DNA of 34,655 nucleotides, from contig CALSCP010002817.1 in assembly GCA_943704425.1 (NCBI GenBank), positions 1-34,655 on the forward strand, in the 5' to 3' direction. Positions 1,359-3,464 of this stretch are shown here, one piece after another (within the stretch, counting starts at the first letter, position 1; every line of letters begins with the position of its first letter). This stretch comes from Ministeria vibrans ATCC 50519 (lineage: Eukaryota; Protista; Filasterea). The notes beneath the pieces were generated by a model, which was given only the letters and a program-made list of their open reading frames with translations, did not search any database and had not been told where the DNA came from. A program made the position numbers and the translations under genes.

Positions 1359-3464
1359 TTAATTAGTCTCTCTTGCCCAACACCACTTCAGAACAGTTTC
1401 TGCTCGCTTGTCGTGCGGCGTGCACTCTGAAAGCTCTTGCACGGACACACCGAGCGTTTTAAACATGTCCTATTAAAATATACAATGCCGTGCAAAATTA
1501 TTAATACTTATTCTTAACTTTTTTGTGTTATTATGATGATCAGCTTATGAGTATTATGATCTTGAATAATAATAATTATTATTATTATGGCTCACCTGAA
1601 ACACCAAGTCGAGCTGCTTGATCTCGGCAAAGTCGGACTGCCAGCGGACGTTGTCGTCGCGTACAAACTCCTTGACAGGCTCCAGTCTGACCACCAATGT
1701 GTTGGGTGCCTTGAGGATGTCCACGAGCTCACGGAACTCGGGGGCTTCGCGCAGTTCCTCCGCCAGACGCGTGCGCTTCTTCCACAGCGTGTACGCGAGA
1801 AAGTCAATGCCTCGATCCATGATGAACTTGCATCCTTTGACGGAGTGGTTCTCGTGCGCGCGCTTGCATTGCTCGCGCATGATCATGCGCTGCAACGCAT
1901 CAAACGTGTCCTCTGAGTACGTTGCTGACGTCGACATGATATCCTCGCGCGAAATGCCCTCTCTGACCATCACAGAGCGCGCCACCTCATCGACCACTGG
2001 CATGCCGGTGAGACGCGCCAGGTCACGTGCCAGCCACGTCTTTCCGGTCGAGTGCGCCCCGCACAACACAATTGTGTCAATTGTACGTGGGGTCACATGT
2101 ACAGCCACCGACTGCGACGGTTGCTGTGCGACGTTCCACTCAAGCGGCACCGTCTCAAGCGTTGGGGCGCCCGGTGCGAGGGTAAAGTCAACGGCACGCA
2201 GAATGCTGTGCAGGACACAGCGTGCCTCAGTCATTGCAAAGTGCTGACCGACGCACGACCGCTCGCCTTCGCCAAAGGGAAACACCGGCGTGTCCGCGCC
2301 TCTGAGACGAAGCTCCGTAATATTGCTAACTGGATCAAACTCGTGGGCGTTGAGGAATACGCTCGTGTCGTGTCCCAAGCCCTCGAGGTAGAGCACGGCC
2401 TCAGTGAAGTCACTCACAACAACACCGCTGGGAACGCTGCGCATTGCGACGGGACCAACGGGGCGCAGTCTCATCGATTCGTACAGCACGTCGTCAATCA
2501 AAGTCACGTTTGCATCTACGCCGTCTTCAGACGTCAAGCGCCACTTGAAGGGTTGCGCGACGGATGTGCTGCTGAGTTGGCCAACGCTGGCAATGCGCTC
2601 GGCGAGCTCTCGCTTGTTGGTGAGCCCATGGATGGCGTTTGATAATGTAGTGGCAGTCGTGTCAATTGTGGCCAGCGCCATCTCGAGCATCAGATGGACG
2701 CGCTGATGCTTCGTGAGATCTGTGTCGTCGTCCATCACGAGCGCTTGGAAGCTGTCAGCTCCCGACGCACTCACTGCAAGGTGCTTCTCAACCACAGCGT
2801 GAGCGTGCTCACTTGCTTTTGCATAGGCGTGACCCGGCAGGCCCGGAACCCAGCGCAACTTTGCCAGCCAGTTGGGACAGAGAAGGAAATGTTCCCATGC
2901 GCCAAAAAAGCCGCACACTGCGTCAATCAGTTCCTGTCGATCCCGCCTTTCAAGGTTGGCTCCCGGGAAAAAAACATCCAGTGATACGCGCAATGTAACG
3001 TGTTGCATAAAACTGTGGAGATCGACACCATCCGCGTTTGGGCTTAGGGGTGTCTCGCTCAAAATATCGTGGACAGCTTGCTCGCAAAGTTGCGGTAACA
3101 TTTCTCGTGTTTTCTTGTTGACAAACTTATCAAAGTAACGCTTGCGGTCGCGATGCCAAAGATCACGGTCCTGTTGCCAAATAACACCCTCTTTGAACAT
3201 GCCAAGGGCACGGAGCCCCTCGGGCGACCCAAAGCGGCTACTCAAGGTTGTTTTTCGAGTGACGCGCCGAATATGTTCCGCGTCGCGTGTCAACAACATT
3301 TTGCCGGCCAGCGTGAGCGTTTTCGTCTCCGCGAGCATTATTGCGCAGAATCGAGGCACGCGTACCCACCACATGAAAAAGCGCACAAGGCCAAAGCCCA
3401 ACAGAGGCATTTGGTCGAGGTGCAACTTCTGCAACGTCAACTTCACTAGGAATTCGCTGATCAT
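1359..3464 (-). CDS. Cytochrome P450 (aromatase/CYP19-like) fused to a C-terminal NadR/Ttd14-like AAA_28 P-loop kinase domain, about 659 aa
   Basis: Exon 3464-1596, intron 1595-1470 (CAG|GTGAG...TAG), exon 1469-1359 (DMFKTLG...WARETN*). P450 motifs: WxxxR (WHRDR), I-helix LEMALATIDTT, ExxR (YESMR), heme loop FGEGERSCVG at 2247-2276. Kinase motifs: Walker A GAHSTGKT at 2037-2060, EVAR, MDRG, DDNVR. The start is uncertain because an upstream exon cannot be excluded. Confidence 0.88.

What the first reader, a model, noticed from the sequence alone, without database searches (positions are those of the whole stretch)
1359..2276. P450 fused in frame to a NadR/Ttd14-type (AAA_28) P-loop kinase: a candidate oxidise-then-phosphorylate enzyme
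Seen: the heme motif (2247-2276) and the P450 end (HVTPR) run, within one exon and with only a ~4-aa linker, into IVLCGAHSTGKT...EVAR...LQ..I...Q...MDRG...DDNVR. A short second exon completes the domain. Established knowledge: known P450 fusion partners are mostly redox partners (CPR, ferredoxin, flavodoxin) or peroxidase/dioxygenase domains. AAA_28 proteins have a nucleoside/NMP-kinase-like fold. I know of no described P450-small-molecule-kinase fusion. Inference: the P450 makes a hydroxyl or phenol and the kinase phosphorylates it, as the separate PsiH and PsiK do in psilocybin synthesis. Alternatively the P-loop domain regulates the P450 through nucleotide binding.
Basis: partly seen in the sequence, partly recalled or inferred. 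Interest (0 to 1): 0.85.

Follow-up and report, generated by a model that had tools for sequence, protein, structure and literature searches.

The report
Expressed P450 fused to P-loop kinase
A marine single-celled eukaryote makes one messenger RNA for one protein that joins an aromatase-like cytochrome P450 to a NadR-type nucleotide-binding kinase domain; the same undescribed fusion recurs in about ten other unnamed eukaryotes, so it is a real protein family, and what it does is untested.

Summary
On the minus strand, one open frame (3464-1596) runs from a P450 domain (Pfam E 2.5e-32) through a 3-4 residue linker into an AAA_28 domain (E 1.7e-15). A 126-nt GT..AG intron (1595-1470) and a short second exon (1469-1359) complete that domain.

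- **Expression:** spliced, poly(A)-tailed RNA contigs from two samples cover the whole gene without a break between the domains. A seawater metatranscriptome shows the same splice. A separate DNA run confirms the assembly.
- **P450 half:** closest to human aromatase CYP19A1 among solved structures.
- **Kinase half:** a profile-level and structural homologue of the NadR ribosylnicotinamide-kinase domain. The P-loop, Glu-x-Ala-Arg, Asp-Arg and lid Asp-Asp-x-x-Arg motifs are all kept.
- **Not unique:** nine other 50%-identity clusters and several intron-bearing metagenome contigs carry the same fusion, collinear over both halves. None is named, and I found no paper on it.
- **Unexpected link:** the same AAA_28 clade is fused to eukaryotic RNA-dependent RNA polymerases. 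In two distant relatives the P450-kinase gene sits head-to-head with an RdRP gene.

"Oxidise then phosphorylate" stays plausible but untested, and the RdRP link weakens it. Verdict: a new variant of a known kind (a P450 fusion with a new partner class).

The parts
3465..3536 (-). 5' UTR (minimum extent); contains a 5-codon upstream ORF at 3508-3491
   Evidence: RNA contigs reach 3516 (X1, adapter at the end) and 3536 (X2). The uORF ATG AAT CCA AAC TCC TAA was read.
1596..3464 (-). Exon 1 coding sequence, 623 codons: P450 domain, linker, most of the AAA_28 domain
   Evidence: ORF. Pfam. RNA contigs collinear over 1595-3516/3536 with no gaps.
2148..3299 (-). Cytochrome P450 domain (residues 56-439), closest to CYP19A1 (aromatase) among solved structures
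   Evidence: Pfam PF00067 E 2.5e-32. PDB best hit CYP19A1 at E 1.6e-18, next family at 6.4e-9. It lies in a clade with the P450 halves of the other fusions, SH-aLRT support 99%.
2247..2276 (-). Heme-binding motif F-G-E-G-E-R-S-C-V-G (Cys404)
   Evidence: Read. F397, G398, G400, C404, V405 and G406 are invariant among the four long fusion proteins.
2073..2084 (-). Linker T-I-D-T between the P450 end (H-V-T-P-R) and the first strand of the kinase domain
   Evidence: Read. The model places strand 1 of the kinase domain at residues 9-14 of the 168-residue piece. Junctions are equally short in P0018, P0100 and P0013.
1608..2072 (-). AAA_28 (NadR ribosylnicotinamide-kinase-like) P-loop domain, the part in exon 1 (residues 465-619)
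   Evidence: Pfam PF13521 E 1.7e-15. Model pLDDT 91.9. Best structural matches are NadR kinase domains at Z 13.9 and 12.9. The family profile hits NadR kinase domains at E 5.6e-16 and 1.4e-13.
2037..2060 (-). Walker A / P-loop G-A-H-S-T-G-K-T (Lys475, Thr476)
   Evidence: Read. G19 and K20 of the piece are invariant and T21 nearly invariant in 95 family members.
1977..1988 (-). E-V-A-R motif (Glu493, Arg496), 18 residues after the P-loop lysine
   Evidence: E38 is nearly invariant and R41 invariant in 95 members. The motif aligns with E-Y-A-R-E of L. lactis NadR.
1812..1817 (-). Asp550-Arg551 at the end of strand 3 (Walker B position)
   Evidence: D95 and R96 are nearly invariant. The Asp aligns with the Walker B Asp of NadR; NadR has Thr where this family has Arg.
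1644..1658 (-). Lid motif D-D-N-V-R (Asp604, Arg607)
   Evidence: D149 and R152 are nearly invariant. The motif aligns with D-D-G-x-R of the NadR lid and is kept in all fusions.
1470..1595 (-). Intron, 126 nt, GT..AG, AT-rich
   Evidence: Skipped in RNA contigs of X1, X2 and X5 and present in DNA run X10. GC falls to 0.34-0.39 there.
1359..1469 (-). Exon 2: last 36 codons plus TAA; completes the C-terminal strand and helix of the kinase domain
   Evidence: Translation. It matches family profile positions 162-189, directly after exon 1's 6-159.
1323..1358 (-). 3' UTR and poly(A) site
   Evidence: RNA contigs end at 1327 (X1, with a 22-nt poly(A) tail read as T on the + strand) and 1323 (X2).

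Best explanation
This is a real, expressed gene for one roughly 659-residue protein. An N-terminal microsomal-type cytochrome P450 of the aromatase (CYP19)-like lineage is joined by a 3-4 residue linker to a C-terminal P-loop domain. That domain is homologous to the ribosylnicotinamide-kinase domain of NadR and has the nucleoside/nucleotide-kinase fold. The protein belongs to a conserved, so far unnamed family of such fusions in diverse microbial eukaryotes.

Shown here: the fusion, its transcript, its conservation, and intact catalytic-type motifs in both halves.

Inferred: the P-loop domain is an active ATP-dependent phosphotransferase. Glu493 would act as the base for an acceptor hydroxyl, and Lys475, Arg551 and Arg607 would hold the phosphates. 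The P450 draws electrons from a separate diflavin reductase. Because the two domains are held rigidly together, I infer that the two activities act on the same metabolite or pathway, either oxidation then phosphorylation or the reverse order. The acceptor is unknown. A nucleoside-like or ribosyl hydroxyl is at least as likely as a P450-made hydroxyl.

I put the identity of the object at above 0.9. The confidence given here (0.4) is for the coupled two-enzyme mechanism.
For: - **Domains:** one ORF with both Pfam domains.
- **Transcript:** spliced, poly(A)-tailed RNA contigs of 2099 and 2088 nt span 3516/3536 to 1327/1323 with only the intron removed. The same junction appears in a seawater metatranscriptome. 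DNA run X10 is contiguous over 1594-3980.
- **Whole-length homology:** collinear alignment over both halves with P0018 (E 2e-56) and P0100 (E 2e-35).
- **Recurrence:** nine further fusion clusters. Metagenome contig L011 has an open frame crossing the junction.
- **Invariant residues in four long fusions:** the heme Cys, E-x-x-R and I-helix D-T in the P450 half; Walker A, E-x-A-R, D-R and D-D-x-x-R in the kinase half. The kinase motifs are kept in all 11 fusions examined.
- **Kinase fold:** model pLDDT 91.9. Nearest folds are the NadR kinase domain (Z 13.9, 12.9), then deoxynucleoside and thymidylate kinases (Z 10-12). The family profile hits NadR kinase domains over the full length (E 5.6e-16, 1.4e-13).
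- **Phylogeny:** the P450 halves form a clade with SH-aLRT support of 99%. Placing the window's kinase half with the other fusions is not rejected and gives a likelihood 34.75 log units higher (p-AU 0.79).
- **Redox partner:** separate diflavin reductase genes exist in the genome.
Against: - There is no substrate, product or activity evidence of any kind.
- The same AAA_28 clade, with identical conserved residues, occurs as stand-alone proteins of about 190 residues and as the N-terminal domain of RNA-dependent RNA polymerases. Its activity is therefore probably not tailored to a P450 product.
- Relatives of the P450 also exist without the kinase domain: L009 and L010 stop right after the P450 end. 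The P450 chemistry therefore does not require the kinase.
- The AAA_28 protein TTD14 binds GTP and lipids, and no kinase activity is reported for it (PMC4624897).
- The full-length model was poor (pLDDT 63.6, pTM 0.55), so nothing can be said about an interface or a channel between the active sites.
- The window's P450 half is a long branch.
Confidence: 0.4

Rival explanations
1. The P-loop domain is a nucleotide-binding regulatory, targeting or assembly module and not a kinase for the P450's metabolite. Binding or hydrolysis of ATP or GTP (or sensing of a pyridine nucleotide) would switch the P450 on or off, or set its location or partners. TTD14 uses its P-loop in this way to bind GTP.
For: - TTD14, an AAA_28 protein, binds GTP but not ATP. 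No kinase activity is reported for it, and it acts in protein trafficking (PMC4624897).
- The domain is promiscuous: it occurs alone, fused to the P450, fused to RdRP, and fused to DUF7768.
- Stand-alone versions of the P450 exist.
Against: - Besides the P-loop, the residues kept are those that kinases of this fold use for the acceptor and for transition-state stabilisation: a Glu 18 residues after the Lys, Asp-Arg, and a lid Arg. Their catalytic roles are known from deoxynucleoside and thymidylate kinases; I state this from memory and did not test it.
- The closest solved relatives are true kinases.
- The window's domain lacks the CYTH domain of TTD14.
Confidence: 0.25
2. The two halves have independent jobs. 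The P-loop domain would be a nucleoside, nucleotide or RNA-end kinase serving nucleic-acid metabolism, possibly RNA-dependent RNA polymerase pathways. The P450's N-terminal anchor merely tethers it to the endoplasmic reticulum, or the fusion is a neutral result of gene neighbourhood.
For: - AAA_28-RdRP fusions fall in the same well-supported (SH-aLRT 98%) AAA_28 clade.
- The fusion gene is head-to-head with an RdRP gene that lacks its own AAA_28 domain in L004, and in L011/L012/L028, two organisms only about 35-40% identical in these proteins.
- The fold is nearest to nucleoside and nucleotide kinases, and polynucleotide kinases score Z about 9.
Against: - The window's genome shows no RdRP at all, yet it keeps and expresses the fusion.
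- The fusion with its very short linker persists across lineages that share only about 27-30% identity. That is hard to reconcile with a neutral join.
- No nucleic-acid-binding domain is present.
Confidence: 0.2
3. The fusion is an artefact: a misassembly, a read-through of two genes, or a pseudogene.
For: The draft assembly has 2860 contigs. The window's P450 half is unusually divergent.
Against: - RNA contigs from two samples and a metatranscriptome, plus an independent DNA run, agree with the window with no insertions or deletions.
- No stop separates the domains.
- The same architecture occurs in many independent assemblies.
Confidence: 0.02

Closest known systems
NadR C-terminal ribosylnicotinamide kinase domain (H. 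influenzae 1LW7, L. lactis 6GYE, 8X7F)
   Same: - Pfam AAA_28.
- Full-length profile match (E 5.6e-16, 1.4e-13).
- Best structural match (Z 13.9, 12.9).
- Shared Walker A, E-x-A-R, Walker B Asp, D-D-G-x-R lid and C-terminal strand-helix. Walker A, Walker B and the lid are defined for NadR in PMC7221760.
   Different: - There is no NMN adenylyltransferase domain and no HTH domain; the partner is a P450.
- This family has a nearly invariant Arg after the Walker B Asp where NadR has Thr.
- The host is a eukaryote.
- The substrate is unknown.
CYP19A1 (aromatase)
   Same: It is the best solved relative of the P450 half by ten orders of magnitude (E 1.6e-18 against 6.4e-9). For family member P0018 the figures are E 3.5e-65 against 3.9e-27. 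The S-S-R-F-G-S..G-L...G-M segment is shared in the printed alignment.
   Different: - Identity is low, and the window is a long branch.
- The I-helix reads A-T-I-D-T-T. From memory, aromatase has A-A-P-D-T there.
- It carries a C-terminal kinase domain, which the two amphioxus cyp19-like genes (496 and 494 residues) lack (PMC11047327).
- Nothing indicates steroid aromatisation.
Multi-domain P450 fusion enzymes (CYP102/P450BM3-type reductase fusions; P450-dioxygenase/peroxidase fusions such as fungal Ppo enzymes)
   Same: A P450 is covalently joined to a second functional domain in one polypeptide, which is expected to couple two steps.
   Different: The partner here is neither a redox partner nor an oxygenase. 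It is a P-loop kinase-fold domain. No FMN, FAD or ferredoxin domain is present, and reductases are encoded separately.
Drosophila TTD14 (AAA_28 + CYTH)
   Same: It is a eukaryotic AAA_28 P-loop protein with Walker A and an hhhhDxG-type Walker B (PMC4624897).
   Different: TTD14 has a CYTH domain, binds GTP and phospholipids, and has no P450. The window's genome has a separate, more TTD14-like AAA_28 gene at contig C31 (L002).
AAA_28-RdRP fusion proteins (unnamed; P0017, P0069 and about 2000-residue relatives)
   Same: They fall in the same well-supported (SH-aLRT 98%) AAA_28 clade, share 35-40% identity with the window's domain, and keep the identical conserved motif set.
   Different: In those proteins the domain is N-terminal and is followed by a eukaryotic RNA-dependent RNA polymerase, not preceded by a P450.

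Membership tests
Cytochrome P450 (PF00067) | Profile match above the curated cut-off | tested here: met
   112.7 bits against 22.8, residues 56-439
Cytochrome P450 (PF00067) | Heme-thiolate motif F-x-x-G-x-x-x-C-x-G | tested here: met
   F-P-F-G-E-G-E-R-S-C-V-G at 2282-2247. Cys404 is invariant in the fusions.
Cytochrome P450 (PF00067) | K-helix E-x-x-R and I-helix acid-alcohol pair | tested here: met
   E329 and R332, and D268 and T269, are invariant in alignment A1.
Cytochrome P450 (PF00067) | Binds heme and gives a 450-nm CO-difference spectrum | not testable with these tools
   Needs expressed protein.
CYP19 (aromatase) family | Closest to CYP19 among characterised P450s | tested here: met
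   CYP19A1 is the top PDB hit with a 10-order margin. For family member P0018 it is E 3.5e-65.
CYP19 (aromatase) family | At least about 40% identity to CYP19 members (the nomenclature rule, recalled from memory) | tested here: inconclusive
   Identity was not computed numerically. A score of 70 bits over about 370 residues implies well under 40%, so this is probably a separate family within a CYP19-like clan.
CYP19 (aromatase) family | Androgen aromatisation activity | not testable with these tools
AAA_28 / NadR ribosylnicotinamide-kinase-like P-loop kinases | Profile match above the curated cut-off | tested here: met
   58.1 bits against 27. 62.6 bits in the genome search.
AAA_28 / NadR ribosylnicotinamide-kinase-like P-loop kinases | Walker A, Walker B Asp and lid Arg in NadR-like order and spacing | tested here: met
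   G-A-H-S-T-G-K-T (468-476), D550 and D-D-N-V-R (603-607), aligned to the NadR motifs. NadR motif positions are in PMC7221760.
AAA_28 / NadR ribosylnicotinamide-kinase-like P-loop kinases | Fold of the NadR kinase domain | tested here: met
   Model pLDDT 91.9. 8x7f_A gives Z 13.9 with 148 residues aligned at rmsd 3.7. 6gye_A gives Z 12.9 with 146 aligned at rmsd 3.4.
AAA_28 / NadR ribosylnicotinamide-kinase-like P-loop kinases | Phosphorylates nicotinamide riboside | not testable with these tools
   Needs an enzyme assay.
NadR proper (bifunctional or trifunctional NAD regulator) | N-terminal NMN adenylyltransferase domain (with or without HTH) | tested here: not met
   Only p450 and AAA-type domains were found.
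TTD14-type proteins | CYTH domain after the P-loop domain | tested here: not met
   No CYTH hit. The protein ends 36 residues into exon 2.
Self-sufficient P450-reductase fusions (CYP102 type) | Fused FMN/FAD or ferredoxin domain | tested here: not met
   None found in the protein. FAD_binding_1 genes lie elsewhere in the genome.

The most novel reading that the evidence does not exclude
This is the first recognised member of an old eukaryotic family of bifunctional P450-kinase enzymes. The aromatase-like P450 and the NadR-like kinase would act in sequence on one small molecule to make an oxidised, phosphorylated metabolite or signal. Through the shared kinase module and the conserved head-to-head RdRP gene pair, the family would be functionally tied to RNA-dependent RNA polymerase pathways. 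That would be a link between P450 chemistry and RNA silencing or nucleotide metabolism that nobody has described.
Probability: 0.2. Interest if true: 0.85.

Novelty: new variant of a known kind. Interest (0 to 1): 0.66.

Why it matters
P450 fusions have been valuable for understanding how nature couples reaction steps, and as self-contained biocatalysts. All well-studied partners are redox or oxygenase domains. A conserved fusion to a P-loop kinase-fold domain would be a new partner class and gives a concrete enzymological question: which acceptor, and in what order.

The P450 half is aromatase-like but sits in unicellular eukaryotes. The family therefore also bears on where the CYP19 lineage came from.

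The same kinase module recurs on RNA-dependent RNA polymerases, and the fusion gene is conserved next to RdRP genes. That is an unexplained association, and it can be tested in any species that has the pair.

The organism appears to be in culture, since there are RNA runs from 2025 and DNA runs from 2022. The protein is therefore experimentally reachable.

Tried and rejected
- **Word-indexed protein searches.** Three were run: the kinase region at fusion length, the whole of exon 1 and the alignment of four fusions. They returned no fusion proteins and only distant P450s. This is a sensitivity limit, because the exhaustive HMMER search did find fusions.
- **ESM Atlas**. Only generic P450 clusters at score 0.87; uninformative.
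- **P0003.** The top hit (E 3.6e-37) is a 61-residue tandem-repeat artefact whose weak matches were summed. Discarded.
- **L003.** This 'AAA_28' hit in the window's own genome is a large multi-AAA protein, probably midasin- or VWA8-like by my reading of its sequence, not an AAA_28 protein.
- **Full-length AlphaFold model.** Poor (pLDDT 63.6, pTM 0.55), so no statement can be made on domain packing.
No result.
- **Context of the nearest stand-alone AAA_28 proteins**. The contigs are too short to inform.
- **Aromatic amino-acid hydroxylase neighbour.** No such gene was found next to the fusion in any other locus, so the 'mini-pathway' idea has no synteny support.
- **Literature.** Searches covered P450 with AAA_28 or NadR, PF13521, IPR038727, choanoflagellate with CYP19, the SRA run numbers, and PF05183. 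Nothing was found on this architecture. One query had a format error.
- **Organism identity.** Run and organism names are coded and no eukaryotic reference search is available, so the organism could not be identified.
- **Joined exons.** The two exons were never joined into one protein for any search.
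Full report
**1. What is in the sequence**

On the minus strand, one ORF runs from ATG at 3464 to 1554 (636 codons). It ends in AT-rich sequence just past a GT at 1595-1594.

Pfam finds a P450 domain at residues 56-439 (E 2.5e-32) and an AAA_28 domain at residues 465-619 (E 1.7e-15). 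The following were read directly:
- The heme motif F-G-E-G-E-R-S-C-V-G lies at 2276-2247.
- The P450 ends at H-V-T-P-R (2099-2085).
- Four residues (T-I-D-T) follow.
- Then comes I-V-L-C-G-A-H-S-T-G-K-T, with Walker A at 2060-2037.

Coding sequence has GC of 0.55-0.64, while the intron and intergenic DNA have 0.30-0.39.

**2. Gene model and expression**

I laid contigs of four public runs on 900-4300.
- Runs X1 and X2 each give one contig (2099 and 2088 nt). These cover 3516/3536 down to 1595 and then 1468 down to 1327/1323, so 1470-1595 is skipped. X1 carries a 22-nt poly(A) tail at 1327.
- These runs have no depth over the intron or the intergenic DNA, so they are RNA.
- A seawater metatranscriptome (X5) has a contig with the same junction.
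- Run X10 covers the intron and both flanks continuously (1594-3980), so it is DNA and confirms the assembly independently.
- No insertion, deletion, joint or transcript end lies between the two domains.

The junction can be placed one base either way. GT..AG fixes the intron at 1595-1470.

I built a family profile without the window. Exon 1 matches positions 6-159 and exon 2 (36 residues, then TAA at 1361-1359) matches 162-189. The short exon therefore completes the domain.

The exons were always handled separately by reference.

A five-codon upstream ORF (3508-3491) sits in the 5' UTR.

**3. The P450 half**

- Among solved structures the best match is human aromatase CYP19A1 (E 1.6e-18). The next family scores 6.4e-9.
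- The heme Cys, E-x-x-R and the I-helix D-T pair are kept.
- The gene is single-copy in a genome with roughly a dozen P450 genes.
- Diflavin reductase genes are encoded elsewhere, so a separate redox partner is available.
- The window's P450 is divergent: word-based searches found only about 25% identical P450s.

**4. The P-loop half**

- The domain modelled alone is confident (pLDDT 91.9, pTM 0.86).
- A structure search without Foldseek puts the NadR ribosylnicotinamide-kinase domain first (8x7f_A Z 13.9; 6gye_A Z 12.9). Deoxynucleoside kinases (Z 11-12) and thymidylate kinases (Z 10-11) follow, then polynucleotide, shikimate and gluconate kinases lower down. Foldseek agrees but is weaker.
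- The single sequence barely sees NadR in the PDB (E 0.16).
- A profile of 95 family members matches the NadR kinase domains of L. lactis and H. influenzae over the full length (E 5.6e-16 and 1.4e-13).
- That profile alignment matches Walker A, E-x-A-R, the Walker B Asp, the D-D-G-x-R lid and the C-terminal strand-helix. NadR's Walker A, Walker B and lid are defined in PMC7221760.
- Invariant or nearly invariant family positions are G14, G19, K20, T21, E38, R41, Q70, D95, R96, D99, Y103, P141, D149 and R152 of the 168-residue piece. All are present in the window.
- One difference from NadR: an almost invariant Arg follows the Walker B Asp, where NadR has Thr.
- From memory, not tested here: a Glu about 18 residues after the P-loop Lys, a D/E-R motif and lid arginines are the catalytic set of deoxynucleoside and thymidylate kinases. 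That is why I read this as an active phosphotransferase for a hydroxyl or phosphate acceptor.

**5. The fusion is a family**

An exhaustive HMMER search with the kinase part against 1.84 billion representatives gave 151 hits. Pfam and phmmer show a P450 followed by AAA_28 in these:
- P0018 (674 residues, complete)
- P0100 (661 residues)
- P0013 (475 residues, N-terminally cut)
- the fragments P0056, P0143, P0085, P0082, P0033 and P0039

All come from assemblies of public runs. They are unnamed and are singletons at 90% identity.

Evidence that the whole architecture is homologous:
- The window aligns collinearly over both halves with P0018 (27% identity, E 2e-56) and P0100 (E 2e-35).
- P0018's P450 half is clearly aromatase-like (CYP19A1 E 3.5e-65, next 3.9e-27).
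- A metagenome scan added intron-bearing genomic copies. L011 has an open frame that crosses the junction and contains both Pfam domains. L012 and L028 are the same or a near-identical organism. L014-L018 have P450 and kinase exons on one strand.

Phylogeny:
- In a P450 tree the window groups with the other fused P450s, with SH-aLRT support of 99%.
- In the kinase tree the quick search left the window just outside the clade that holds the other fusions. However, the tree that holds them together has a likelihood 34.75 log units higher and is not rejected (p-AU 0.79).
- Stand-alone relatives of the P450 also exist. L009 and L010 stop directly after the P450 end and nest inside the clade. The kinase domain has therefore been lost or gained more than once, or these are isoforms.

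**6. An unexpected association with RdRP**

- Many hits are proteins of 1300-2000 residues in which the same AAA_28 clade (SH-aLRT support 98%) forms the N-terminus of a eukaryotic RNA-dependent RNA polymerase. P0017 and P0069 were confirmed by Pfam.
- In L004 the P0018 gene starts 87 nt from the start of a divergently oriented RdRP gene that has no AAA_28 domain.
- The same head-to-head pair occurs in L011, L012 and L028. The proteins there are only about 32-42% identical to those of L004.
- The window's genome has no detectable RdRP, so the pairing is not universal.
- All P450-fused, RdRP-fused and stand-alone members keep the same motif set.

I cannot explain this association. It argues that the module's chemistry is generic and not tuned to a P450 product.

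**7. Mechanism**

Shown: one polypeptide, one mRNA, conservation of the fusion, and catalytic-type residues kept in both halves.

Inferred: an ER-anchored P450 and an active P-loop phosphotransferase, held together by a 3-4 residue linker, act in one pathway. I give this about 0.4. The rivals are:
- a nucleotide-binding regulatory or targeting module, as in the GTP-binding TTD14 (PMC4624897): 0.25
- independent nucleoside, nucleotide or RNA-end kinase activity linked to RdRP biology: 0.2
- artefact: 0.02

The full-length model was too poor to show an interface, and the complex predictor was unavailable.

**8. Comparison with known systems, and novelty**

- The kinase half is a member of Pfam AAA_28 and a homologue of the NadR kinase domain. 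The protein is not a NadR (no adenylyltransferase domain) and not TTD14-type (no CYTH domain).
- The P450 half is CYP19-like but is probably a separate CYP family.
- The two amphioxus cyp19-like proteins are 494-496 residues, so they are not fused (PMC11047327).
- P450 fusions are a known concept. A P-loop kinase-fold partner is not described in any paper I could search.

I therefore rate it a new variant of a known kind. It is a first description of a family, not a singular oddity.

**9. Organism**

The genome is 29.7 Mb in 2860 contigs. The gene is expressed in seawater. Earlier notes of this scan call the organism an animal-relative protist. I did not test that.

Noticed in passing
L004:1-6088; L011:272-4561; L012 and L028: A eukaryotic RdRP gene (PF05183, without an AAA_28 domain) lies head-to-head with the P450-AAA_28 fusion gene in two distantly related organisms. 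The gap is 87 nt in L004. Many other proteins fuse the same AAA_28 clade to the N-terminus of an RdRP. The association is unexplained.
   Followed up: partly
window 28-1257 (+): A biopterin-dependent aromatic amino-acid hydroxylase gene with introns (Pfam Biopterin_H on the exons at 170-352 and 525-653). It is highly expressed and lies tail-to-tail with the fusion gene. Its poly(A) site is at about 1257, only about 70 nt from the fusion's poly(A) site at about 1327. No such neighbour occurs in any other fusion locus.
   Followed up: partly
window 34032-34297 (-): Exons of a second P450 gene lie at the far end of the window (Pfam p450 positions 365-438, E 3e-6 and 3e-5).
   Followed up: no
window 3491-3508 (-): A five-codon upstream ORF (M-N-P-N-S-stop) sits in the 5' UTR, 27 nt before the main ATG. 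A second in-frame Met (residue 19) precedes the hydrophobic segment and could be the real start.
   Followed up: no
L009:287-1510; L010:90-1535: Stand-alone relatives of the aromatase-like P450 in metagenome contigs stop directly after the P450 end. They share the W-D-[IV]-A-[NQ]-Q-P signature and nest among the fused forms in the tree.
   Followed up: partly
G000:C31:89337-89606 (L002:1137-2108): The same genome has a separate AAA_28 gene with introns and a P-E-T-A motif after the P-loop. From my reading of the sequence it looks more TTD14-like than the fused domain.
   Followed up: no
P0008 (334 aa): Another architecture in the AAA_28 hit list is DUF7768 followed by AAA_28.
   Followed up: no
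L014:2487-3165: In the L014-L018 metagenome contigs, the roughly 1-kb gap between the last P450 exon and the kinase exon holds a short tandem repeat that translates as V-H-S-C-P-type units. It is probably intronic.
   Followed up: no
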